A stretch of DNA of 58,291 nucleotides, filler included, from Sluysia triapertura (lineage: Eukaryota): the NCBI GenBank assembly GCA_046118255.1. It is 4 parts of 4 records of this genome, joined end to end, with 100 filler letters (N's around TTAATTAATTAA, not from the genome) between each part and the next. Parts side by side here need not be neighbours in the genome. Positions count along the whole stretch, not along the records: positions 42,077 to 58,291 come from JBJNIA010208480.1; 3 more parts are not named here. One strand, given 5' to 3'. Positions 42,077-58,291 of this stretch are shown here, piece by piece; positions within the stretch are counted from its first letter, which is position 1, and every line of letters starts with the position of its first letter. The notes below the pieces were generated by a model. That model was not told the origin of the DNA, did no database searches, and saw nothing but the letters and a program-made list of their open reading frames with translations. The position numbers were made by a program, and so were the translations under genes.

Positions 42077-45000
42077 CATCAAGACTAAGGACTCTTTCGC
42101 AGTACTGACATAGTATTTCCTATAACTAAGTCTTCCGAGAGATATAAATCTTAGATTATAGGCGAACCCAGTAAAATAATTATAATTGTTCATTAAGATA
42201 AAATAAAAAATACTGAACAAATATAACTATTCCGATAGGTATGATCATGACTTTTTAAATTTTTTTAATATTTCAACTATCCAAATAATATATATATTTT
42301 TCTAATGCTAATGCCGACCATTTTTAATTAATTTTTTTATTGATAAACTTAACTTTTATTTTTCTAAACGTAATTATTTAAGGATTAATTCAAGTTTGTT
42401 TAAAACTAAACGTATTAGGATCGGTTAAATGATCGCTTTTAGTTTTTATTTAAAAAAATACTTTGAAATTGTATTGATGGATTTGTAGAGATGTGAAGGT
42501 GTTAGAAAAAATGAAATAATAATAAAATTATAAATATTGTTTAAGTTTTGTAGAAAATTATTTAATTAATTTTTGTAAAATTTCATCTTTTATTTAATTC
42601 ATGTGTGAGAATATGCAAAGGTGTTTTCACCTAACTTACGATGAAAATAGTAATCTGGATAGAGTTCGCCTAACAGAAAACGACTTAAGTCTGAATGACG
42701 GCGGTCTGTTAGGATTTAAAGAGAAAGTTTGACTTAGGAAGAGTCACGTAAAGACTGTCTACTTAAAAGAAGGAGTACGTACGAAGAATATGAAGAGTAT
42801 ATGAACACTTTTATTATATATATTTTAGATGATTTTTAGTTAGCCTTTTTACGATCTAACTTCAGTAAATAAAATATTAAATTAGCCGGTTACGGTCTAA
42901 TTGTGGAAAAATTGTTATAGTATCTTAGTATGTTAAGCTAGCCTTATTACAGTCTAGCGTTAAATGATTTTAGTTCTTTATAGCGAATCGGTAAGACTCA
43001 AACAACTACTTGTAAGGTGTATTATCAAAAACATAAAAAGTATACAATCACGATAAAGATTTTAAATACTTTAATCAGGATTAGATTTAGTATTGTAGAT
43101 TTTGGTGAGAATTTAACTTATCCTTCTTGCGGTATAAGTTAAAAAATTTCGTTAATTATTTTGAGTAAAATTTTACTTCTCCCAGTTACGGTGAGAAGGT
43201 TCAAAACCTATACAAAATAATTGTTGATTGATTAAGTGAATATTTTCTCGCAAATGGCTTTCTAAAAATTCTACCAAACCTGTTGGTATATATATAGAAT
43301 TTTCAGTAGCCATCTTGCATGTTTATTGGTTTTAAAAATTTAATTTACTTAAACAAAATCTAAAAATTTAATTTATTTAAACAAAGTAAAATTTAGTATG
43401 AAATTTTAATTTTAATTTTGATTCTATTTATTTTAAAACTTTAATTTATTATTTTATTATAATATAAATAAATATTATTTATCAATAAAATAACTATTAT
43501 ATAATAATTATAAAATAAAATAAAATGACTTCAAAATTCAGTCAATTTCAATTAATTGTTCTCAATTAATTATTAAACACTTCGATTAATTGCTGTTAAG
43601 CACCGTTACGCAGCGTCACGCCGCATCCTGAATAATTTTAAAAGATAAAATAGAATAAGATTTTAACATGAGTCCACCAACGTACTAGGCTTCCCAGTTA
43701 GGGCTAGCCGTTGGATTTGTAGATAAATGATTTTAAAGGGTAGAAAAAATTTATAAAGTGTAGTTTTTGATAGGGTATTCTTTGCTTAATAACTTGACTA
43801 TTAATTTTAATTTTAATTCTGAAGGTATTTCAAAACTTTTAATGATAATAAATTTATGAGCGTATGGTTAACTGAAAAAATCAAAATTAGTTTGTGAAGT
43901 ATTTTACGATAATCCTATGAAAATGATCTATTAAAATGATTTTACGAGATTAGATTTAAATTCTAATAGTAGAAAACGTACTCTACTATAGATTTTATAT
44001 TTGAAACTATGAAATCTTTTAAAGAATAATGAACGATTACTTAAAATTTTATTAAATACAAAAAATAATAAAGGAATTTATAATGGAAGAAAATATATGG
44101 TAGTTTACCAGGAATTAAATGAAATTAATCCCTGAGTCAATAATATTTTAATGGAGATTTTACATCAGATGTATTATAAGATCTGTTAAATTATTATTAT
44201 TTTAACTTAATATATTAAAACAATAAAAATTAACTTTTTAATTTTAAAAATTTTTAACTTAATATATCAAAATTAATTTAAGATACTAAAATTAACTTTT
44301 AAAAATTTATAATTACTTACGTTCCAATATTAAAAAAATTCAATTATAATTCAATTAAAATATCCAAAATAAATTTCAAATATAGTTGAAATAAATAAAA
44401 ATCAATAAATTAAGACACACAAAGTTATAATAGTATTAATATGACACTAAATCATGATTAGTTATGTGAATATAATGTACACACAATTCTGTACACATAT
44501 ATTATCTAATATTAAATTAGAATTTGTTAAATAGAAATAATTATTATGTTGGGTGTTTTTCTTAATCTAAAAACCTAAACTACAGCAAAATAATTAATTA
44601 TTATGAGTCCGTTTACAGTATACGACTTACTAACGGCGTACCTGTAAAATTACGTGAAAGCAATTATCAGAATTAATTCGTATAAAAAATATTCTTTGCC
44701 TTAACTTAACAATAATGGGCAAAATCGTCGTTTATATCAAGTAACAATAAATAACTTAAAAACTAATTAAGACATATATAGATATACGAATTAATTAATA
44801 ACTGCCAGAACCTTTTTAATTTCTATTTATTTTATAAATGATATTAGAATTAATGTTCTTGCAACGAAAAATATATTCAAATTTAAGTTACAAAGTGAGT
44901 ATTAATACAATTATAGTGAAAAGAACACAAATTTTGAGAACTTTCTAGTAATTTTTATTAAACCAAAATATATCAAAAATAAAACTAATATAAATTTACA

Positions 45001-45821
45001 AAAAATATACGATGAGCGAATATTTATAATAGAAAAAACATTAGAAATGACAAATTTGATAAATGATAAAAATAATGACGATAATAATTGAAATATAATA
45101 AGGGTCTAGCCCAGAAGACTCTACAATATCTATTTTATAATTGACCTTTAAATGGATTTTGTGATTGGCCTTAATGACCAACCATGAAAAATAGTATTTT
45201 ACGTTTAAATATTAACTCAACGAGTGAGTGTTCAGCTATGTAAAATTAACTTACGGATTAATCAATAATAAAAATTGGAGCTCGGCTGATGGAAGTAATT
45301 TGTTGAAGAGTGACTTGATCTGTGGTGATGTTGACGTTTGGAGATCGCTATCCCTCTAATCGTAGGCGCGGGATTTAAGCGATAATGTATAAATTGAATC
45401 GCAGAGTTGATAGAAGGTACCACAAGCTGATGATGAATTCGCACAATAACCAAAATGGAGTCTTCTGATTTATAATAATCTTTATTTGGAACAATGGTGA
45501 TCTTCTTTGTTTATAATTTAATTGTGATTGCACTTGGCCTTCTAATTTTTCATGATGGCGATTGTTTTATTTGTGACTGTCTTTACATAGTCATAGAGAC
45601 ATTTTTGAAATTTGATACATTTAAATAAACTTCTTTCTAGAAGTTTCTTTTTATGTCTTTTTAAATTTATAATAATAATAATTTTAATTTTATTATAATT
45701 ATATTAATAATATTTTAAAATATATAAATTTTAATAATTTTATAATATTTTTTAAAATTACACAAACATAAAAAAATCAAAAACATGAAATATAAAATAC
45801 AAAATTATATTCACATTTACA
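42077..45821 (-). mobile_element. Non-coding, highly structured repeat element of at least 3.7 kb (candidate LARD-like retroelement or large structured RNA)
   Basis: No credible ORF; many hairpins and long-range stems separated by AT-rich spacers. The right ~1.2 kb is homologous to 1-1013. It may be a composite of more than one copy. Confidence 0.6.
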
Positions 45822-47141
45822 GTATATTTGTCACTAGTAATTGTATCATCATCCATATTTTTGTTTTTACATCACTTTTAGAAATGGGAACATGTTTTAT
45901 AATAAATCTTTGTTCAGTTATGTTGTTTTGTTCTTATTATATACATACTACCTTTATTTGAATTACTTATTAAATTTCAGAGATGCATTTAATTATAAGG
46001 AATGCAAAGATATAATTGCTTTAACTGTGAAATATGGAATTATTGGCTTTAATATAGTCATAGAATACAGTAAATTTAATTTGACATTACTGATGTCCAT
46101 CGTGATACAATATGATAGCATTATACGATTTGTGTAATAATTATGTTACAAACGCTGCTTGCATTCCTTCAATTATATCTTAGGTGCTGGTGTGACTAAA
46201 TATAAAAAGCATTATTTGATATTCGAGAATGTTATAATTATTTTGATTTTAATGATTTAAGTAACGCAACTTTAAGATGTTTTACAAAAAGACGAAAACC
46301 TTCTCCATCACACATGATGTACTTATCGTTTTTAATTCCTTTACACAATCCTATTACTTATGAGTCCGTTTATATTGATAGAAAACGTTATTTTGTTTCA
46401 AACAGAAAATAATGTAGTTGTATTGTAATTGTATCACAATACAGTTTTAAGTTAGTTTATGTTTTACTTTTTTTTTGTTCTTTTTTGTGCTAGTGAATAA
46501 AAAAGTTTTTGTTTATTTGGATAAATTCCTTAATCTTTGTTAAAGCCTAAAGTTATGATTAAGTTAATGGTTAAATTTTTTAAAAAAATTAATAGAATTT
46601 TGGTTAAATTAATTTTTTTAAAGTTAAAGAAAAGTTAAAATTGTATAACTTTCTTAAATATAATAAAAATATAAAGCCCTCTCTAAAATATATATAACAT
46701 TCATCTATTTGGACCATTTATTTAAATGTTACGCATAACTAACATTCGTACACTAATATTTGAACACATAAAATATAAATATTTTAAATTAAATTTATAA
46801 ACATTTTACAATTTATAAATAATTTACTAAAAAATATATAAAAAATAAATGATATTATCATAAAATAAGAATGAAATATTAATTATAAAAAATAATTAGT
46901 TTTATTTTTGAATTTTTAGATAGTTTAAATGGTTAAAAAATTGAACATTTCAAAAAGGTCTTTATTTAAAATTTTTTAGGAAAATTTATTTTTCAAGTTT
47001 TGATTAAGTAAAATATTTTAATTTTATATTCATGTTTAAAACATATCAAAAATATATTTACGTAATTTTGTTAGAAAAGATTTTTATTATTTATAAAGTT
47101 TTAGATTAATTAAATATTTACTATTTCAATCTAATTATATT

Positions 47142-50100
47142 ATGGAAAAAGTTAATATAAAGAGAAAGTATTCAATAAGATTTATTAATTATGTAAGAAG
47201 TTTTATTAGTAGTTAGTACAATTTTAGAATTCTTTCACAACTGTGCAAGAAATAGAGAAATTATTTTTTTCTAATAATAAAGTTGTAAGTAATTATAATT
47301 TAAGTTATAATTATTAGATTTTCAAACCTAATTGTAAGTTAGAACTCAATTTGCTAAAAAATGAAATACATATTCGAAAAAAGAAGAAACTTTTATATCG
47401 AATAATTTTTCGACACCTGGAAGTAAGACATGTGGAAGATCCAGAAATACCTAGAGTAGATTCATCCAGAATTGTTGGATCTCCAACTTTTGACTTACTT
47501 GTCTTTTTTAATAATCCTGGTGAAGCACAACAATTTGACTTAAATGCAAATGAGTATAATTTTGTAATACATAGAAATTTTTTATTTAGAATGTTACAAC
47601 AACAGCAAATTTTTGAACCAGTGGAATTTACTATGCACGTTAGAAATGGCGAAAGTGTTTTAAATCAGATAGAGGAGGTTGTAACAGTCGATTCTACTTC
47701 AACAGCTAAATCAGTTTTACTTGAGATTAAGGATAAATATTGCCAAGATTTTCAAATAGAAAAATATGTTCTACTGGTTAATGTCGGTGGAATTGAATAT
47801 CTTGCTAAAGATGAATGTAGAATTGTTCGAATTATAGAACATTCTATTTCGTGCTCTGATATTAAATGTAATAGTGACTCATTATTGTCAACTGGGTTCA
47901 ATTATTCTAACATAACGTGTATTTTAGCCAACTGTGGTGACGATTTACCAATAGTTAATAAAAAAGGTATAAGTACAACAGTATATTCCCAAAAACGAAA
48001 AGCTTCTTCCATTAAAGATATCGGAGATAAAAATAAAGAATTTGAATATGTCTATAAAATGCGTCCAACTTGTAATGGTTTGTCTAAATCAGTACCTGCA
48101 TGGCTTTTACGTATGCTGGCAGACTTGTATTTTAACGGTTATGAAACTAATGATGTTTTTAGAAAAGGTTGTGGTTTTCCTATCGAACAAAAGAACGAAT
48201 TTCTTTACAAAATGAATAAATATGTTGATTTTAGTGTCCAAGACTTGAGTATTGAAAAAAAAGCCGTTCTTGTAAAGGTAATTTTAATTTCTTTATAAGA
48301 TATTGTATTGCATTATCTTTATTATGTAAGTCACATTTTATGCAATAATATTAAGATTATCAGTGTACATTCATTGCAATACAAAATAATCATTTATTGA
48401 AAATCAAGTATAATATTCGAGTTCATTATGTAATTAAATACACTTCACATTTATTACTTATTAGCTAAATTATAATCTCTGTATATTAAATTCAGAAATA
48501 TATGGAGCGTTACGGAAATTCAATATTTGGTAAATATGTATTGAGAAAATTAGTAAATTTTATGAGGAGTTTGCAAGTTAAACCTGGTGCAAATTTTAAG
48601 AGTGCTTCTGAAGGTAGAAATGCTATATTATTTACAGAAGAAAATAGAACACAATTACTTAAGTTAGTTTTAATTTGAGTTGTAAATTATTTAAAAGCAC
48701 ATAAAGCATTACAAGGCCTAATTAATTTTTCACAATATATTTATATTAAATATTTGTAATAAATAATAATAATCTTTAAATTTAAGAAAATGTGTTTTAA
48801 ATTACTTAAATTGTATTGGAATTATTAATATTCGAAATACATTTTCGATGAAATATGCATGTGGTATTTTTAGGTATTATTCCTTATCACCCCCAACAGG
48901 TATTGTGACTGCCAGAGTTCTAAGTTATTGTGCTTAAATCACTACCTCATAAAACTTATGTGATGCTCTTTTTATAACTTTAAACTTAACATAATTTGTA
49001 TGGCTTTTGCAATAGATCTCAATTTTCTATTTATAAATTCTTACAAGGATTTTATCTTTAATGTTACTGTTTTGGTTGTTTTTTTTCTTTGAGATTAAGG
49101 CAATTTTACTTAAGCTTATTTGTTAAGTTTATTTAAATATTAGTATTTTATGAATCAATGTCGTTCTAAATGCTCTTTAAATTGATCATCTGGATCACTA
49201 ATTATATCTTTAAAACTTAATGTTAAACCGTTTTAACGTAGTAAAATTGTGCTTGATAAGATATCATATTTAGGAGCAATACAAGATATATTGTGATGAA
49301 CAATGTTTTATGCATTATCAAATTCGTGAAATTCTCTGCACCTAGCAATAAAAATAGCGCTAAAATTTTCTAGGCCATAGAGCGAGCAGTATTAAATTAA
49401 ATTTTATAAAATTGATTTTATCATTTGCAGGTTAATGAATGAAATTCCGAAAGAAAACAAATATTTATTATGTCATATCTTATTTGTCATTGAACGCCAT
49501 TATGAAAATAGTGAAGTTACGAAATTAAATATTGAGTCTATCGGTGTTCTTTTTTCACAGTGTTTATTTCCTGATAAGATAATATTACAATTAACACAAA
49601 AGAATAAAAAAAATCGAATAGTTGTAAATTCATCTAAAATTTCTGGAGTTCCCCAAGTAAAACCAATAAATAATATTAGCTTTGATGATCCATGTTTATT
49701 GGTTGGTCAAAAAATCACAATCGTGGAAGAGATTATGCTCTTAAGGCGTCATTTGTTGTCTGACGAATTAAGAAATGAAATTAAAGCTAATTTAGAAAAT
49801 CATTTAATACAAAATGGTACTTATGTTTTAGCAAGTGAAATTATCCATCCATGTGATTCTGAACCTGAAATTTTAAACACTGACTTTCACAGTAATCAAA
49901 CAGAAGAAACGGAAGATGACAGGTACATTCTATTTTTTAATACCAGAGAAACAGTCTATTAATACATATTAAATTAAATGCTTTAACGTATTTAAAATAA
50001 TATTTGAGATTTTAAAAGTTCATGTTATATTCAATTTATATAAAAATATACACTATTGTTTTTAAGTGGTATGGGTTGATATTGAATATAAAAATAAGTT

Positions 50101-52209
50101 ATAAAATAAAACTTATATTAAAATGATGGAAAAATGCTATCACATTTAACCCCTTAACGCACACTTTAAAAAAACTGGCAAAAGTTTTATTTAAGAACAC
50201 ATTTTAGAACCTTGTTTCAGAAAAAAATCAAAATTTTAATTGTAATTCTGGATTTTGATCCACATTGCAGATTCGAATTTTGTACGTACATCAACTTTTA
50301 ATGTCATTGTGTTTCGAAAAAACGTGTTTATCACTAAAAATGTACATTTATATTTTTCAACAGAAATAATAAAAATTATTCAAAATTTTGAATCCCTCAT
50401 TTTTGATATACATTTTACTAAAGTACAATGTAAAATAAAATATAACATTAATTTGAAAATTAAAAAACACATTAATTGCATAAATATCCAATATATGCAA
50501 TTTTATTTTCTGTAATCACAAAATAACTGTCTTTAAAGATATGCTTATCTATGCAAGTTTACAAGACTTAAGTAAATATTGAACTATACAATAAAAAAAG
50601 AGAATTGAGTATTTGATATTTCATAACTAAATCGTAAAATATAAGAAACAATGGCCTTTATATAAATTCACAAAATCGCAAATGATAAGTGTAAATAAAA
50701 TGAACCCGCTCGAATTAACATACTTTGTAATTTGTTTACTGTTGTAACTGAATCTATTTACTATTTTCTATATAAAAATGTAACACGATTTTAGAGAATG
50801 TTTTGAGTTGAACAATTTTCAGTATAAATTGAATCTGATTATAAAACTATAGTGTTACATAACTTATTTAATTTTTAATCGAAAATTGCATTTACAGTTG
50901 TCAAAATGCAAACGTCTTGTTTTCAATAAATAATTTGTCAATACATATTTTATACAAATTATTGGATAAATAACAAATAAAATATTTTTAGTTGTAAATT
51001 ATAGATATTTTATAATTATGGAATGTGTCTACTTTTTATATTCAAAAAATTTTAACAAAGATATCTTGAATTTTCGTAATATCAATATTTTTCTAATTAG
51101 TTAAAAATCTGAAATTCTTTCGTTCTTGTAAAAGAACCCATGTATTCAAAGGTTTTCTGTAGTGTATTAAACAATTCTAATAATCAGTTTGTAATTTATG
51201 AGAAAATTTTACTGAGATTTTATTATGAATCTTATTTAGAATTCTCAATTAGCTAGGTTTCGGAATTTAGGTTTGGCTCTTAAATATTTGTAAATAAAAT
51301 AAATCTAACGCATTTCTAATCTAATAAATCTAATCATTTCAACGGAGCTATACATATAGAGATAGATAGATAACTCAAGCATCATCCTATAAATTGTAAA
51401 CTAAATTTGATCAACTTATTGGCAAAATATCATGGTATTAAAACTAAAAGTATTATATTAAATTCCAATTTTGTATTTTTATATTCAGTTGCTGTAGTAT
51501 AACAAGCCAGACTGCAAGTACTCAAGATTTCTTAAATGATGTAATAAGTAAATATGATGACGACGACGATGATGATGATTTGTGCTTAAGCAAAGATTCG
51601 ATTGAAAACCACGATCCTAAATGTAATAATGCTATTGAAATTGCACCAAAAAGTAATCTTGACAATCAAATATCTATTGCAAATACTGCGGTTATACGAC
51701 GTATATCTGGGTCCAAACGCTCCTCGGAAATTTTAACTCCTGTTTCCATAGTACCTAGGAAANNNNNNNNNNNNNNNNNNNNNNNNNNNNNNNNNNNNNN
51801 NNNNNNNNNNNNNNNNNNNNNNNNNNNNNNNNNNNNNNNNNNNNNNNNNNNNNNNNNNNNNNNNNNNNNNNNNNNNNNNNNNNNNNNNNNNNNNNNNNNN
51901 NNNNNNNNNACATATACTAACATCAGCCTCATTTGTTCTGATGATTTTACTTCACCAGTTTCCAAGTTACCTTGTACTAGTAATGCTAATCGTCACATCA
52001 ATGAAATAGATCCTCCTTATACTGTTTTTACACCACATCAACAAACTATTGAATCAGCACGTTATTCACCCACTTTTAGTGAAAAAAACAATTTGTTTTT
52101 GAATTTAGATTTACCTAATGTGCGCCAAATGGTTAATAAATATGAACAAATTCAACAGCAATGTCACAGTTATCAGTCGGTTTCAACCATTAAAAGAAAA
52201 ACTAGTTAA
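47142..52209 (+). CDS. ARHGAP20-like Rho GTPase-activating protein (RA domain + RhoGAP). Exons 47142-47192, 47228-47284, 47318-48277, 48496-48662, 49431-49922, 51489-52209
   Basis: All introns are GT-AG and phase-consistent. RA-like VVTVDSTSTAKSVL...KYVLLVNVG; RhoGAP VPAWLLRMLADLYFNGYETNDVFRKG, AVLVKKYMER and EIPKENKYLLCHILFVI...SEVTKLNIESIGVLFSQCLF. The 147-N gap preserves the frame. Confidence 0.85.
51763..51909. other. Scaffold gap (147 N) inside last RhoGAP exon
   Basis: Run of N. Confidence 0.97.
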
Positions 52210-54859
52210 ATACATCAATAAGGCTTCATATATTTGTATATTTTACGTAACTGTGTTTAGTTTATTTGATTATTTCCATAATTTTGTCTTTCATTAAACA
52301 TGTGCATTTGTCTTAGTAAGATTATCCAAACTCTTTTTAATTTTAGGATTCTATTTACATCTATTAATGGAAATAATTCATCTATAAAATTTCTATTGTT
52401 TAATAGTAGATATTAGTTTTATTTTTTTTCTATTTTTCTATATATTGCTAAATTCTATTCTTGAATATATTGTACTATATTAAAGTATATTTATTTTTTG
52501 TGTCATCTCATCAAAATTTAGGTGCATTATATACTTTTGTTTGTGTTTTAGTGTTAATAACAACTTATATCAATTCATATTCTGTACCTTTAAAACTTCA
52601 AATTGGAATTAAACAATTACAAATAAGAATATTTATTTACAATTAAGTCACGAAAGATACCTAGAAGATGTGGTCCTATAATTTACATGAATAAGACTGA
52701 CTTCAATTTATTTATATCAAGAAAGAGGGACGATCTGAAAAATTGTTTAATCCCAAATTGAACTTGTAAAGGTTTAGTGTACCAAAATTTCATGTTGGTA
52801 GTCACTGATTTTATATTATGAATATTTAAAAATAACTGCTGCTAAATGAATATTAAAACATTTAAATTAATGCTACTGGATTTTTATTTCGTAGCTTGTG
52901 ATATATGGAAATTTTAATAAAACGGTACTTTATTTTTAAATATTCAAAATTTGTCAATTTTTAGTGTTTAAGCATGTTTACCGCCAAGTGCTTTATCGTC
53001 TACCTTAATTCTTATGCCAGGTTTTCCCGAATTTTTGGAAAAATTAGTTGGTATAATACACTGTTTATACATTTTATACAATGCAAGACTTTTAAGGTAT
53101 GATTAAATTGTTTTTTTTGGTTATCTATTAATTTATAATAAGCTATAATAAATTTAAGCGGACAAATTCGATAATGTTGAATATAATTTGATGACTGAAA
53201 ATATTTTCATAATATTAGAATGTTTTTCAATGAAGTTTATGAAAGTTATTTTAAGTACACATGATTTATAAGCAGAAAATGGTAAATTATAAGGTTAATT
53301 CATTTGCAAATAATTATATTGTAATGATTTCTAAAATATTTTACTTTATATTATTTGATTTACTCATTAACATCGTCAATTAATTGTAAATAATCAAAAG
53401 ATCTATAAAACAATGAACTTTGAAATGTTATTTTTAAAATGAGTGTTCTATTTTGTTAAATTTGATGATCGAAGTTATTAAATGTATACATAATTATAAC
53501 GAGTATATTAATGTGATTCTGAGTATATTAATGTGTTTTGCTTAAGTTATATTGGAGATATTTTCAAATTAAAAATTAGATTTTATAAACATATTTACAA
53601 ACATTCTAAATTAAATTTAATAACATGTTTTTCGGCATTTTTCAAAATACACTAATAAATTCGGTACACTTGTGATGTATTTAAAATATTTCGAGTTATG
53701 ATTATTAACATTAGTTAAATAACAGTTTTAAATTAAATTACAAACTAATGTCTATTATAATTAGAAATTAACTCGTCTCTTTCGTAGTCATTAATTTTTA
53801 TTTCAAATAAAGTCACTGGAAATATCACGAGTAAATTCGTCTTGATAATGCAGCGAATGAGTTAAATATCGAATAATTTGATTATGTATTATGAAATTAT
53901 TAATCTATGTTATCTTTAATTAAAAGTACTTTCCAAAAGAAGTTTTAGAATAAATTTGCGATTGTGTAAAATCTATCAGTCTTGAATTGATGAACAATAA
54001 TGTTTATTATTTACTATTTTTCCGATACATATTCTATAAATATGGTTAGTTTATGCAATCGTGGATTTTACTTTTAAGTTATAAATTTACATTCCAATAA
54101 TAAAAAGTTGAAAATATCTTCAAATTTTTATATTTATATAACATGTTTTTCCATAGCAAATATTGTAAATGATTTTCATCTCTCATTGGCATGCATGTGT
54201 TACAGTAATTTAGAAATATTTTGTAAATCTAAATAATTTTCATTTAATATATATAGAAACTATCTGAAATAAATTAAATCTCTATATTTAGGTCATTTAT
54301 AAATTATAATACTATTTACGTTATACAAAACGATTAGTACTTTATCTCTAGTTTTGTGCTTTTGTATGCTTGTAAATGAATTTGTTTATTTGCTATTCTT
54401 GTAAATAGTCTTTGTTATGAGAATAAGTGATAATTGTATATTTAAAATTTATAAATAATTTTAAGTTAAGGAAATTTTTACACTTTTCGGTACATTTAAT
54501 TTGGTCATATTTTCATTACCGTTATAAACAAAAAATAATTCGTATAATGAACAATTAAAAATAGAAAATTTGTTAATATATAATAAATTACAGATAACTG
54601 TAACACTTTATGCACAAATGAATTTTTTGTGGTTCCACACTTGTATATATATTTGAGATTTTTCATATTAGTTTTATTTTCAGAAATTAAATAATTAAAT
54701 ATATTTATAGTTTTATAGGGACTTGTTATAAGGCAAAGATATCTTTTAAAAATTATATTCTACTTTAGTATTTTAATCAATGTGTAAATATTTAAAAGTG
54801 ATGATTTGTTTGTGTTCACATTGAAAATGATTAAATTGTAGTGAAGTATCGGACTTTAA

Positions 54860-54929
54860 CACATCATTAGCGGGAAGCCAAACAGACAGTCCATAAAACG
54901 GGTACTAATAACTGCCCGCTCATAATGTG
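54860..54929. mobile_element. 70-bp piggyBac-type MITE
   Basis: TTAA flanks; TIRs cacatcattagcgggaag / ctgcccgctcataatgtg (15/18 match). Confidence 0.8.
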
Positions 54930-55399
54930 TTAAGATTTATCTGTCAATATAAATAGTTTAGTATGTGCACAATACATTTATGATATTTTAAATGTTATCA
55001 ATTCAAATAGATAAACTTAATTAGATTTTTTAAATAAATTGTAAACATATTAATATTAAATCATTTAATAAACATAGTTGGCAATTATTGGGCTATAAAA
55101 TTGTTGTGTTTTTGTTATTTTTAATTTACAATATCAAATAACTCAGTAAATGACATTCGAAATCAATATATTTTGAAATAGCACTATTTTATGACAATAC
55201 ACCTTTGCAAGGTTTGACACAACATAATATCAGTAAATACTGGAACCTTCATTAATAATAAAAAAGAAAAGCATGTTACTAACCTTAAAGTCCCCTATTG
55301 TGTTGAAAATTAAACTTCAATCTCAGTGTTGTCAACAAATAGATTGAGGTATCATACCTAAGGCTATTATCTTTACACATTATATTAAATTCATTATTA

Positions 55400-55950
55400 A
55401 AATTGTCATGAATTAGAAGAAGATGATGAAGGTGAAAACATAACAATGTAAAGATGAAAAACATAACAATGACGAAGAAGATGAAGATAATGATAGTGTT
55501 GAGGAATATAATAATACCCATCATGCTGTTGATACATCTTCTCATATTGGTGATGCAGCTGCTTGTGAAAAAGATGTTCTCGATGAAGACGAAGATGATG
55601 ACAATGATGGTCCATAGAAGAAGATGATGATAACACGAATCCTGCTGCTGCAACTTCAACACAAAGAGAAGCGATGGAAGTTTCGCTCCTCGTGGTTGCC
55701 AGACAGTAGTCGTTCTTGTTCTAGTTCCTTATTGGAATGAAGATGGTACTGTCGATGACACAGTCTTACCACTGTTGCTGTATTTTGGACCCGAAGATGG
55801 ATCTTTAACTGTTGGAGACAATGGCCAATTGTTTGCAGAAAAATGGACTGAAGATGGATCGGCTGTTCGAGTTCTCTGCTCCAGTGGTCTTGGCCTTGAC
55901 CCACGAAGATCCTTTACTCAGCTTGATCCGACATTTTTTGTGTATGTCTG
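55400..55950 (-). pseudogene. Decayed Ser/Thr/Pro-rich low-complexity coding segment (strand uncertain; the plus strand reads acidic)
   Basis: Elevated GC and codon-like periodicity. Minus frame VKDLRGSRPRPLEQRTRTADPSSVHFSANNWPLSPTVKDPSSGPKYSNSGKTVSSTVPSSFQ contains stops. Confidence 0.35.
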
Positions 55951-56003
55951 AGATATAAATGTGTGATGTATTTTTCTTTTATGTAATTAAGTATATAATA
56001 AAA

Positions 56004-56650
56004 TCCAGGGTCGTTTTGTGGACTGCTTTATGAAAACGCCTTATCTGTAGTCCATTTTCCCTACAACTAAATAATCAGACTTTGATCTTTTCTGTTAAAG
56101 CCAGAAATAATATTCTCAAACTCACTTTCTGCCCTCAAAATATTAGGCTTCATCTTCCTATCACTTGTCTCTGATGCGGCTTTGAACGTGAAACGATTAC
56201 CCTATCTTTTGTCTGTGACCTCACAATTTTACAATGAGACGTAATGATAAGACAATGAGACATAATAAGATACTAGAATATCTCTCTAGTACAAAAGGGC
56301 TTTTCAGTTAAGAAAGACACACAAACTCCTCTTACTGATGATTACCGAAGACCCGACATTCAGGCAAAGGGCACAAATTCATCCCAACTTTTTCTCATTG
56401 ATGTCAAATCACCCATCGATGAATATGACAAATTAGAGCGGCCAGGTCTCTTAATATTGCTGTGTACTCTGATCTTAGGGAGAAACTCCAATCGGAACTT
56501 AAATGTCAGGTTTCCCTTTATAACTGTGTAGTTGGTTCATGGGATCGCGAAAATGACATTGTCTTAAAAAAGTTAAGTTTCCGCAAATCTGATATCACTG
56601 ATATCAAGCTGTCTTTGGAGTCGCCTTTTAACATTTACAAGGATAAGATT
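56004..56650 (+). mobile_element. 3' fragment of RLE-type non-LTR retrotransposon (NeSL/Utopia/R2-like), degenerate
   Basis: QGRF...FSVKARNNIL, then CCHC knuckle remnant TCL*CGFERETITYLL, then MRHNKILEYL, then the restriction-like endonuclease RRPDI...LIDVKSPIDE...YSDL...VVGSWDRENDIVLKKL. Confidence 0.85.
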
Positions 56651-56664
56651 AAGTTTAAAAAAAG

Positions 56665-57880
56665 ATTAATTAATTAAAAATCTTAATTAACTTAATTAAG
56701 AAAAAGTACGTTTTTGTGAATAACTCTTGAATGCATAATACTATGTTGAATTTGAAACTGTGTATGTATTTGTTTTGAAAATACCTTTCGATGAAGCCAT
56801 GGTTTGACCGAGTTCATACAAGAAAAGCCTTAATATTGAGTAAATCAAATTTAATTAATTTTTAATTATGGAATGTTGAATTTTTTATACTTAGTGTGAT
56901 GCGAGTGTAATGAATGGAACATGAGATGATTGCTATGTAAGAGGAGAATTTATAAGGAGTTCGAAATATTTCTAAAGTGGTTCGTTTGAGAATAAGAACC
57001 TTAAAACATTTTTCATTAGAAAATTTGGTGTGAAAAACCAAAAATCAATTAAACTCTGAAAACTAAAATTAAATTCATTATTATTTTATGTATGTTAACA
57101 ATAATGATTATTATATTAATGTGAGAATTAATTTAAGTAAAAGTTGATTGAGTAGAGTAAAGGAAAATAATAGATAATCGTAAATCAATTTTTTGTGTTT
57201 TGTATCTAATAAAGTTTGAAAGTATATACAATGTAACTATAAAAGTTATTATTGCCAGATTAATTCTCAAAGAATGTTGCAGTGATTTGTATGAAAGAAT
57301 GTTTAATAAAAAATTTGGAAATGATTGGATGATGAGAAAATATAAAAAGGAATACCAAAAAATTTTACCTCACAACACAACAGTAATAAGAACAATTAAT
57401 AATGCAAATGAGAAGATCAATCCTTTAAGTAATTTTTGAATTTTATAATTAACAATAATATTATTTTTCAGGGATTTTATCAAAATAGTACTTGGCTTTG
57501 TGTTATTTTTTGGAAATTTATATTTGATTATTATTAAGAAATAATCGTGAATAATTAATATTTTTCTTAGTGTTTGTTGCTTCACATCTTTAGATAGATT
57601 GTTATATCATTGATACTATTATTAACGTTATTGTAATCTCGTCATTTTACTCATTTTTAGTAATTTTTAGTGGAGATTTATAATAATAATAATAATAATT
57701 TGTATTTGATTTTCCTTTAACCAGTAAATTATTGTGTTGTTGTTGATTTGATTTTCAATAGCTTAATTTTTGGGTGAATAATTATTATTATCAAAGTAAG
57801 AGAATTACTGAATTACATTGATATTGATTTAGCGTAATTAATAATTTTCAAAGGCGCAACATAATTTTTGGTTCTCCCGG
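56665..57880 (+). repeat. ~1.2-kb dispersed repeat (copy of 39200-40600)
   Basis: See 39200-40600; it directly abuts and truncates the RLE retrotransposon. Confidence 0.85.
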
Positions 57881-58029
57881 TTCTTTTTATTTTATTTAAT
57901 AGTAGAAATTATAGAATTGTATTGTGGTCGCCAACCTTTTCACTTAAAATTAAAATTACCACTTCACATGAAATATCACATTTTCTTACATTTTTACATC
58001 TTACTTTTTCGGATCCATTAATTACATTT

Positions 58030-58130
58030 AAAACATTTTAACTCATAATTTCACAATTTACATCTTAAGTTATCAAAGATATATGTTAAAACATTCCAAG
58101 TTCACAACTCTTAAACATTGCAATCAAAAC
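58030..58130. repeat. Dispersed repeat related to ~10460-10550 (inverted)
   Basis: aaaacattccaagttcacaactctt resembles revcomp of aagaattgtgaacttgaaatgtttt. Confidence 0.55.
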
Positions 58131-58291
58131 GGAATTTCTTTTAATATCTATAACTACTCATTATCATTTCTTCTACTACTTCATAAGATTTCAACAGATA
58201 ATTATAGACATTTTAAAGAAAAAATTGTATATAAAAATGAGAAAAATACCTAAAGATTATGTATATCCTTAAATATATCCTTATATATATA

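What the first reader, a model, noticed from the sequence alone, without database searches (positions are those of the whole stretch)
42077..45821. Multi-kilobase non-coding, pervasively base-paired repeat family (candidate new structured retroelement or lncRNA)
The 3.7 kb has no ORF but is packed with stems: cctataa-ctaag/cttag-ttatagg, cctaacaga/tctgttagg, aaaactaaa/tttagtttt, gcaa-atggct...aaaattcta/tagaatttt...agccat-ttgc (43240-43320), atagtaga/tctactat, ttaattcgtat/atacgaattaa, tttgcc/ggcaaa and agaac/gttct. Long-range complementarity also exists (taggcgaac 42159 with gttcgccta 42664). Diverged homologues occur on two other contigs, and all three copies touch contig breaks, which suggests a multicopy family. 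The common end reads TGTAA on the minus strand, with a TATA-like box ~190-240 nt inside, as in an LTR 5' end. Inference: a LARD-like non-autonomous LTR element, or an endogenised structured RNA replicon that keeps structure rather than coding capacity.
Basis: partly seen in the sequence, partly recalled or inferred. Interest (0 to 1): 0.8.

Follow-up and report, generated by a model that had tools for sequence, protein, structure and literature searches.

The report
Hairpin array in AT-rich non-coding DNA
Most of this 3.7 kb is ordinary AT-rich non-coding DNA next to a RhoGAP-type gene, but about 1 kb of it holds a real cluster of six to eight small hairpins that share one loop sequence on different stems, and their function is unknown.

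Summary
It is not pervasively base-paired. Sliding-window folding gives mean z of -0.3 (+ strand) and -0.5 (- strand). Outside 42600-43720, short inverted repeats match local-composition shuffles. The 9-mer long-range pairing is at chance level. TATA-like boxes and TGTAA are everywhere at about 78% A+T. The piece contains no LTR pair or long repeat. The multicopy claim could not be tested, because no relative of this genome was found in any collection I could reach.

One part is real. Between 42624 and 43198 lie six hairpins, all in the same orientation. Each has a perfect 5-10 bp stem of different sequence around the loop CC-N2-4-TT[AG]C[AG][AG]T; shuffles give 0.0003 such hairpins, and the rest of the 16 kb has none. 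All five stem positions covary. Weaker relatives extend the cluster to 43714. A 75-nt hairpin at 43246-43320 has z -6.5 on the minus strand.

The likeliest reading is an array of identical loop sites on a single-stranded nucleic acid, weakly favouring minus-strand RNA. Its function and family are unknown.

The parts
42624..42647 (-). Hairpin h1. The + strand reads ttttca-CCTAACTTACGA-tgaaaa. The - strand reads uuuuca-UC-GUAAGUUA-GG-ugaaaa.
   Evidence: 6-bp perfect stem around the loop motif; dG -6.5 on the - strand, -1.5 on the + strand.
42838..42861 (-). Hairpin h2. The + strand reads agttag-CCTTTTTACGAT-ctaact.
   Evidence: dG -4.6 (-) and -1.9 (+). The U.G plus C-G upper pairs form only on the - strand.
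42880..42902 (-). Hairpin h3. The + strand reads aattag-CCGGTTACGGT-ctaatt.
   Evidence: dG -6.5 (-) and -8.0 (+). This is the only member that is more stable on the + strand.
42937..42958 (-). Hairpin h4. The + strand reads gctag-CCTTATTACAGT-ctagc.
   Evidence: dG -6.6 (-) and -5.2 (+).
43112..43143 (-). Hairpin h5. The + strand reads tttaacttat-CCTTCTTGCGGT-ataagttaaa, with a 10-bp stem.
   Evidence: dG -9.4 (-) and -8.5 (+).
43176..43198 (-). Hairpin h6. The + strand reads cttctc-CCAGTTACGGT-gagaag.
   Evidence: dG -8.8 on both strands. The MFE of the larger region adds an outer stem.
42669..42713 (-). Possible degenerate member. A 9-bp stem (CCTAACAGA/TCTGTTAGG) encloses a 27-nt loop that begins A-CC-G on the - strand, like the others.
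   Evidence: stem present; z -1.7, not significant on its own. Resemblance judged by eye.
43677..43714 (-). Weaker relative. The sequence is ccaacg..ctag-GCTTCCCAGTTAGGG-ctag..cgttgg. The core CCAGTTAGGG matches the h6 loop CCAGTTACGG at 9 of 10 positions.
   Evidence: sequence.: - strand dG -17.5, z -2.1.
43246..43320 (-). Hairpin of 75 nt with about 26 bp, resembling a pre-miRNA. It lies just 5' of the array in minus orientation.
   Evidence: - strand dG -28, z -6.5, 0 of 200 shuffles as good; + strand dG -23, z -3.5; 3 G.U pairs on the - strand, none on the + strand. No Rfam miRNA family.
42077..45821 (.). The finding as delimited: AT-rich (19-27% GC) non-coding DNA. It lies upstream of, or in the 5' part of, a + strand RA/RhoGAP-type gene whose recognisable exons begin near 45982 and 47345.
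   Evidence: CpG o/e is 1.27-1.51 here, against 0.63-0.95 in the rest of the piece.

Best explanation
The 3.7 kb is not one pervasively folded element. It is ordinary AT-rich non-coding DNA flanking, or inside the 5' part of, a RhoGAP-type gene.

Embedded at 42624-43198, with weaker relatives out to 43714, is an array of six to eight short hairpins. Each presents the same asymmetric 11-12-nt loop on a stem of different sequence. A 75-nt hairpin lies beside them.

Shown:
- The array is far beyond chance.
- The loops are conserved and the stems covary, while the spacers have decayed to chance identity.

Inferred:
- Pairing is maintained by selection in a single-stranded nucleic acid, and the repeated loop is a recognition site for one trans-acting factor. 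This would make a multivalent platform of the kind seen in protein-titrating RNAs and viral packaging signals.
- The acting strand is weakly favoured to be minus-strand RNA, reading stem-A-YC-GYAA-N2-4-GG-stem. It could be a divergent or antisense non-coding transcript running leftwards from the CpG-richer 45.2-45.5 kb region.
For: - Six hairpins match the rule 'perfect stem of 5 bp or more around CC-N2-4-TT[AG]C[AG][AG]T'. All lie on one strand within 575 nt, and the rest of the 16 kb has none on either strand. In 3000 dinucleotide shuffles of 42600-43340 the mean count was 0.0003 and the maximum 1.
- Of the 8 places where the loop motif occurs at all on the + strand, 6 carry such stems, and these are exactly the 6 inside the cluster.
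- All 30 stem cells are Watson-Crick. All 5 stem positions change on both sides (11 cells). The covariation score is 1.17, against 0.28 +- 0.10 in shuffles (0 of 500 reach it) and at most 0.23 when partners are slid.
- Mean pairwise identity is 0.87 at the anchored loop positions, 0.41 in the arms and 0.32-0.36 in the 20-nt flanks; chance is 0.29.
- TRF finds no tandem array in this stretch.
- 42600-43340 folds better than shuffles: z -2.8 (+) and -4.2 (-).
- Strand evidence: five of the six hairpins are at least as stable on the minus strand. The three C-to-U differences in the two loop-closing pairs all keep U.G pairing on the minus strand only. The long hairpin has dG -27.6 with 3 G.U pairs on the minus strand, against -21.7 on the plus strand.
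Against: - There is no evidence of transcription.
- No orthologue or second copy was available, so covariation rests on six paralogous units that were themselves picked by requiring perfect stems. The pairing statistic is partly circular.
- The motif was defined after seeing it.
- The 39 lower-stem pairs include no G.U pair on either strand. That is more typical of DNA-level hairpins than of RNA helices.
- The hairpins are short (dG -4.6 to -9.4) and sit in very AT-rich sequence.
- The strand preference is weak: three substitutions, about p 0.125.
- Another strong hairpin (54857-54933, z -4.1) lies elsewhere in the piece, so the 75-nt hairpin may be unrelated to the array.
Confidence: 0.5

Rival explanations
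1. The region is part of a non-autonomous LTR retroelement (LARD/TRIM-like), oriented on the minus strand. The hairpin array would be an internal cis-element of its genomic RNA, for example a packaging, dimerisation or export signal.
For: - The region is non-coding over 3.7 kb.
- Arrays of stem-loops sharing a loop motif are how some viral packaging signals are built. [quoted passage not shown]
- The piece ends at 42077, so a second LTR could lie beyond it.
Against: - The 16 kb has no LTR-like direct repeat and no long repeat of any kind.
- No PBS or PPT was identified.
- There is no gag/pol remnant.
- TGTAA and TATA-like motifs are uninformative at this base composition.
- Composition is continuous across 45821.
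- Copy number is unknown.
Confidence: 0.15
2. It is a DNA-level feature: a decayed array of short dyad-symmetric units whose hairpins or cruciforms form in single-stranded DNA. They could be sites for an HUH-type nuclease or transposase that nicks in a loop, or replication- or recombination-associated palindromes. No functional RNA would be involved.
For: - All 39 lower-stem pairs are strict Watson-Crick, with no G.U on either strand.
- h2, h3 and h4 lie 42 and 57 nt apart and share TAG/CTA next to the loop, as recent local duplicates would.
- From memory, not tested: rolling-circle Rep origins carry conserved, asymmetric 11-12-nt loops containing TTAC on variable stems.
Against: - No Rep, transposase or helicase remnant lies in or near the region.
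- Origins of that kind have one hairpin per replicon, not six in 575 nt.
- TRF finds no tandem array, and the spacers are at chance identity.
- The loop-closing pairs are kept only if U.G is allowed on the minus strand.
Confidence: 0.2
3. It is a cluster of small RNA genes or pseudogenes, for example U5-like snRNA stem-loop I copies or spliced-leader RNA genes.
For: - The + strand loops resemble the invariant U5 loop I sequence GCCUUUUAC in an 11-nt loop (PMC2784804): h2 has gCCUUUUUAC and h3 has gCCGGUUAC.
- A Sm-like AAUUAUUUUGAG follows h5.
- On the minus strand the loops contain 5'-splice-site-like GUAAGU, GUAAAA and GCAAGA.
Against: - Rfam U5 and all other snRNA and SL models give nothing, even at E<=10 on the 1.3-kb cluster.
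- Hairpins 42-64 nt apart leave no room for gene bodies and promoters.
- The 5' arm of each stem would lie outside an SL-type transcript.
- The Sm-like site follows only one hairpin.
Confidence: 0.04
4. It is pure chance in AT-rich sequence.
Against: The six loop-sharing hairpins are not: 0.0003 expected against 6 observed, and 6 of 8 motif occurrences carry stems. Post-hoc definition of the motif cannot bridge four orders of magnitude.
Confidence: 0.02

Closest known systems
Multi-hairpin recognition arrays in RNA, for example the alphavirus packaging signal (stem-loops with repeated GGG motifs; PMC6283419). From memory: bacterial CsrB/RsmZ GGA-loop sponges and Drosophila roX-box stem-loops.
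   Same: Several short stem-loops lie within a few hundred nucleotides. The stems differ in sequence, and one short motif is presented in every loop.
   Different: The loop motif here (- strand A-YC-GYAA-N-GG, + strand CC-N-TTACGGT) matches none of them. There is no virus, no coding context, no known binding protein and no evidence of transcription. This is a resemblance in how it might work, not membership.
U5 snRNA stem-loop I (11-nt loop containing the invariant GCCUUUUAC; PMC2784804)
   Same: The loops are 11-12 nt and on the + strand read (g)CC-UU/NN-UU-AC, closed by a stem.
   Different: There is no match to the Rfam U5 model. The long bipartite stem I, a consistent Sm site and a 3' stem-loop are all missing. 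Six copies sit 42-214 nt apart.
LARD/TRIM non-autonomous LTR retrotransposons
   Same: A multi-kilobase stretch without coding capacity.
   Different: No LTRs, TSD, PBS or PPT are visible in the available sequence. Copy number is unknown.
Pre-miRNA hairpins (for 43246-43320 only)
   Same: An imperfect hairpin of about 75 nt with about 26 bp, dG -28 and z -6.5.
   Different: There is no Rfam miRNA family and no small-RNA data. A similar hairpin occurs at 54857-54933, so these may be foldback or MITE-type palindromes.

Membership tests
LTR retrotransposon / LARD | Two long terminal direct repeats (TG...CA) bounding the element | tested here: not met
   The repeat finder and self-BLAST of the 16-kb piece give only A+T low-complexity matches of 170 nt or less at 66-90% identity. 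Caveat: the piece ends at 42077, so a partner LTR could lie beyond the edge.
LTR retrotransposon / LARD | PBS next to the 5' LTR, PPT next to the 3' LTR, and a 4-6 bp TSD | not tested
   No LTR boundary is defined, the piece has no tRNA gene, and no tRNA set for this organism was available.
LTR retrotransposon / LARD | Multicopy, dispersed family | not testable with these tools
   Only this piece is available. The neighbouring exon has no relative in the word search, among 1.84e9 representatives, or in metagenome contigs, and the exact-protein look-up with the next exon (175 aa) also found nothing.
Any Rfam family (ribozymes/retrozymes, group I/II introns, snRNAs, SL RNAs, miRNAs, viral cis-elements) | Match to the covariance model at or near the gathering score | tested here: not met
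   There were 0 hits at E<=1 over 16.2 kb. On 42500-43800 at E<=10 there were only Ref64 (17.4 bits, gathering score 44.3) and Corona_pk3 (17.0 bits, gathering score 35.6), both at chance level.
U5 snRNA | 11-nt loop I with the invariant GCCUUUUAC, a Sm site and a 3' stem-loop | tested here: not met
   No loop has the exact 9-mer; the best are h2, with one extra U, and h3, at 7 of 9. The U5 model gives no hit.
Tandem repeat / minisatellite | Head-to-tail units with recognisable identity over the whole unit | tested here: not met
   TRF reports no array in 42600-43330. Flanks and spacers are 32-36% identical, against 29% by chance.
MITE / foldback transposon | Terminal inverted repeats bounding the unit, plus a TSD | tested here: not met
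   No inverted pair of 14 nt or more with 2 or fewer mismatches and 4 or more G/C brackets the cluster.
Structured RNA under selection (generic) | Folding energy below shuffles, and compensatory base-pair changes | tested here: inconclusive
   Met for 42600-43340 (z -2.8 and -4.2) and for the six stems. Not met for the rest of the 3.7 kb. The covariation comes from six paralogous units chosen for perfect stems, and whether the acting molecule is RNA or DNA is unresolved.
pre-miRNA (43246-43320) | A stable hairpin of about 60-80 nt that yields a ~22-nt duplex | tested here: inconclusive
   The hairpin criterion is met (dG -28, z -6.5). Processing and expression cannot be tested here.

The most novel reading that the evidence does not exclude
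A so far undescribed non-coding RNA, transcribed from the minus strand upstream of a RhoGAP-type gene, carries six to eight stem-loops that display an identical A-YC-GYAA-N-GG loop. It would act as a multivalent binding platform (sponge, scaffold or packaging signal) for one RNA-binding protein. This would be a eukaryotic counterpart of loop-motif arrays such as CsrB or viral packaging signals, possibly carried by a mobile non-autonomous element.
Probability: 0.2. Interest if true: 0.65.

Novelty: new variant of a known kind. Interest (0 to 1): 0.38.

Why it matters
If the array is transcribed and bound by a factor, it would be a compact natural example of a multivalent hairpin platform in a eukaryote from a poorly sampled lineage. 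Its loop code is readable directly from the sequence, so it could be tested by pull-down.

If it is instead the internal signal of a mobile non-coding element, it would show what such elements conserve when they carry no genes.

The practical lesson for the scan is that hand-found stems in sequence of about 78% A+T are mostly chance. The signal was a shared loop on covarying stems, not the number of stems.

Tried and rejected
**Searches that came back empty or uninformative**
- tRNA scan: no tRNA genes.
- Rfam, whole piece and cluster only: nothing meaningful.
- Pfam on nine short ORFs in the region: nothing.
- blastn (distant mode) against phage genomes: no match.
- Organism and other copies via the neighbouring gene: word search, phmmer against 1.84e9 representatives, metagenome contig scan and exact-protein look-up were all empty. 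No orthologous or paralogous locus could be fetched.

**Checks within the piece**
- LTRs or long repeats: the repeat finder, TRF and self-BLAST found only low-complexity matches.
- TIRs around the cluster: none.
- The 15-mer TTATGAGTCCGTTTA, shared by 44602 and 46357, has no extended homology.
- A relaxed hairpin descriptor (any GYAA loop) was too noisy in this composition to add members.
- MAFFT alignments of whole hairpins mis-registered h1 and h6. I therefore built no covariance model, and counted pairs on condensed 19-nt sequences (5-nt arm, 9 anchored loop positions, 5-nt arm) taken.

**Ideas considered from memory and set aside**
- Spliced-leader RNA genes: the 5' stem arm would be untranscribed, there is no ATG|GT junction, and the spacing is too tight.
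- Others: tRNA arms, Smaug/IRE/MS2-type operators, integron attC and REP elements, CRESS Rep origins, insect mitochondrial control-region hairpins, and NUMT.

**Steps not run**
- A collection-wide DNA pattern scan for the array.
- The N run 51764-51909 was left untouched.
Full report
**Context**

The piece (42077-58291) is 19-39% GC and looks like nuclear DNA of an AT-rich eukaryote.
- It has no tRNA gene and no Rfam match at E<=1.
- On the + strand lies a multi-exon gene. The 315-aa exon (47351-48295) gives a weak RA-domain hit, and the exon at 49435 gives a weak RhoGAP hit. Likely further exons lie near 45982 and 46180 (read).
- The 315-aa exon has no relative in the word search, none at E<=0.001 among 1.84 billion representatives and none in metagenome contigs. 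The exact-protein look-up with the 175-aa exon is also empty.
- The organism is therefore not represented in the collections I could reach. No other copy or orthologue of the finding could be fetched.
- I searched exons one at a time by reference.

**Check of the observation**

Every quoted stem is present, including TTACA at 45817-45821. The longest ORF is 63 aa, and the nine ORFs of 35 aa or more have no Pfam hit.

The claim of pervasive pairing fails:
- Across 61 windows of 120 nt, mean z against dinucleotide shuffles is -0.28 (+) and -0.52 (-). The other 204 windows of the piece give -0.05 on each strand.
- A whole-region shuffle suggested an excess of short inverted repeats (z about 5 for 7-mers with loops of 60 nt or less). 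That control ignores the local A+T-only tracts.
- With 100-nt block shuffles, the finding outside 42600-43720 is at expectation (92 against 86 +- 14). Only 42600-43720 keeps an excess (62 against 34 +- 9.5).
- The long-range 9-mer complementarity is at chance level (104 against 87 +- 15).
- TATAWA occurs 11.7 times per kb, and TGTAA/TTACA occurs 92 times in the piece. The proposed LTR-end features carry no information.
- The repeat finder, TRF and self-BLAST show only low-complexity matches, with no LTR-like direct repeat. No TIRs bracket the structured part.

**What is really there**

Between 42624 and 43198 lie six hairpins in the same orientation, each with a perfect stem of 5-10 bp:

| Hairpin | Start | + strand sequence (stem-LOOP-stem) |
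|---|---|---|
| h1 | 42624 | ttttca-CCTAACTTACGA-tgaaaa |
| h2 | 42838 | agttag-CCTTTTTACGAT-ctaact |
| h3 | 42880 | aattag-CCGGTTACGGT-ctaatt |
| h4 | 42937 | gctag-CCTTATTACAGT-ctagc |
| h5 | 43112 | tttaacttat-CCTTCTTGCGGT-ataagttaaa |
| h6 | 43176 | cttctc-CCAGTTACGGT-gagaag |

- The rest of the 16 kb has no such hairpin on either strand. Three thousand shuffles of 42600-43340 give a mean of 0.0003.
- The loop motif alone occurs at 8 places on the + strand. Six carry stems, and these are the six in the cluster.
- Anchored loop positions are 87% identical between units, arms 41% and 20-nt flanks 32-36%; chance is 29%. The units are therefore islands of conservation, not a young tandem repeat, and TRF finds no array there.
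- All 30 stem cells nearest the loop are Watson-Crick. All five positions change on both sides. The covariation score is 1.17, against 0.28 +- 0.10 in shuffles and at most 0.23 for slid partners (on condensed sequences).
- That pairing percentage is partly circular, because I selected members for perfect stems. The 6-of-8 association is the independent argument.
- Weaker relatives sit at 43677-43714 (core CCAGTTAGGG, z -2.1) and perhaps at 42669-42713.
- Next to the array is a 75-nt hairpin, 43246-43320. It has dG -28 and z -6.5 on the minus strand, and dG -23 and z -3.5 on the plus strand.
- The 741 nt from 42600 to 43340 fold with z -2.8 (+) and -4.2 (-).

**Strand, and RNA versus DNA**

On the minus strand the units read stem-A-YC-GYAA-N2-4-GG-stem.

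For minus-strand RNA:
- The two loop-closing pairs are CC/GG in three units and UC/GG or CU/GG in three. They stay paired through U.G on the minus strand only.
- Five of the six units are at least as stable on the minus strand.
- The long hairpin has three G.U pairs on the minus strand.

Against:
- None of the 39 lower-stem pairs is a wobble on either strand. That is what DNA hairpins would show.

I therefore favour minus-strand RNA only weakly.

**Mechanism**

The shown facts are conserved asymmetric loops, covarying stems and decayed spacers. They imply that hairpin formation in a single-stranded molecule matters and that the loop is what gets recognised.

The best-supported model is a multivalent array of identical loop sites for one trans-acting factor. 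[quoted passage not shown]

Three carriers remain open:
- a host non-coding transcript, perhaps divergent from the CpG-richer 45.2-45.5 kb region; CpG o/e is 1.27-1.51 across the finding, against 0.63-0.95 elsewhere;
- single-stranded DNA.

**Comparison with known families**

- The + strand loops resemble U5 snRNA loop I (invariant GCCUUUUAC in an 11-nt loop; PMC2784804). However, the Rfam U5 model and all other models find nothing, even at E<=10 on the cluster alone.
- LARD/LTR membership fails for the one feature I could test, the LTR pair. The remaining features could not be tested.
- Tandem-repeat and MITE definitions are not met.
- The array works like known loop-motif arrays but belongs to no described family.

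**Verdict**

About two thirds of the region is unremarkable, and the LARD or replicon reading is unsupported.

A smaller, sharper feature is real and unexplained: a roughly 1-kb array of loop-sharing, stem-covarying hairpins. Interest is moderate (0.38). It would rise if the array proved to be transcribed, conserved or multicopy.

Noticed in passing
window 54857-54933: A strong isolated hairpin with 19-nt arms (ttaacacatcattagcggg / cccgctcataatgtgttaa). The minus strand has dG -32.1 and z -4.1; the plus strand has dG -23 and z -2.3. It could be pre-miRNA-like or a foldback element.
   Followed up: partly
window 52586-52773: 33-nt inverted-repeat arms, 88% complementary and 122 nt apart, just 3' of the RhoGAP-type gene. 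This looks like a MITE or foldback element. Overall fold z is only -1.3.
   Followed up: partly
window 56300-56699 (+): A frameshifted, stop-ridden remnant resembling the C-terminal restriction-like endonuclease region of R2-type non-LTR retrotransposons (..RRPDIQAKG..LIDVKSPID.., then ..VVGSWDREND..). It is followed by TTAATTAA-type short repeats. There is no Pfam hit; the assignment rests on my reading of the motifs.
   Followed up: partly
window 55285-55950: A GC island (36-39% against about 22% around it) with acidic ORF fragments on both strands, no Pfam hit and the lowest CpG o/e in the piece (0.63).
   Followed up: no
window 42077-45821 versus 45822-58291: CpG observed/expected is 1.27-1.51 throughout the finding but 0.63-0.95 in the gene and downstream. 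This may indicate an unmethylated or promoter-like domain. The counts are small.
   Followed up: no
window 47351-52206 (+): A RA/RhoGAP-type multi-exon gene whose 315-aa exon has no detectable relative (E<=0.001) among 1.84 billion representative proteins. The lineage is very divergent or unsampled.
   Followed up: partly
window 44602 and 46357: The exact 15-mer TTATGAGTCCGTTTA occurs twice, with no homology beyond it.
   Followed up: yes
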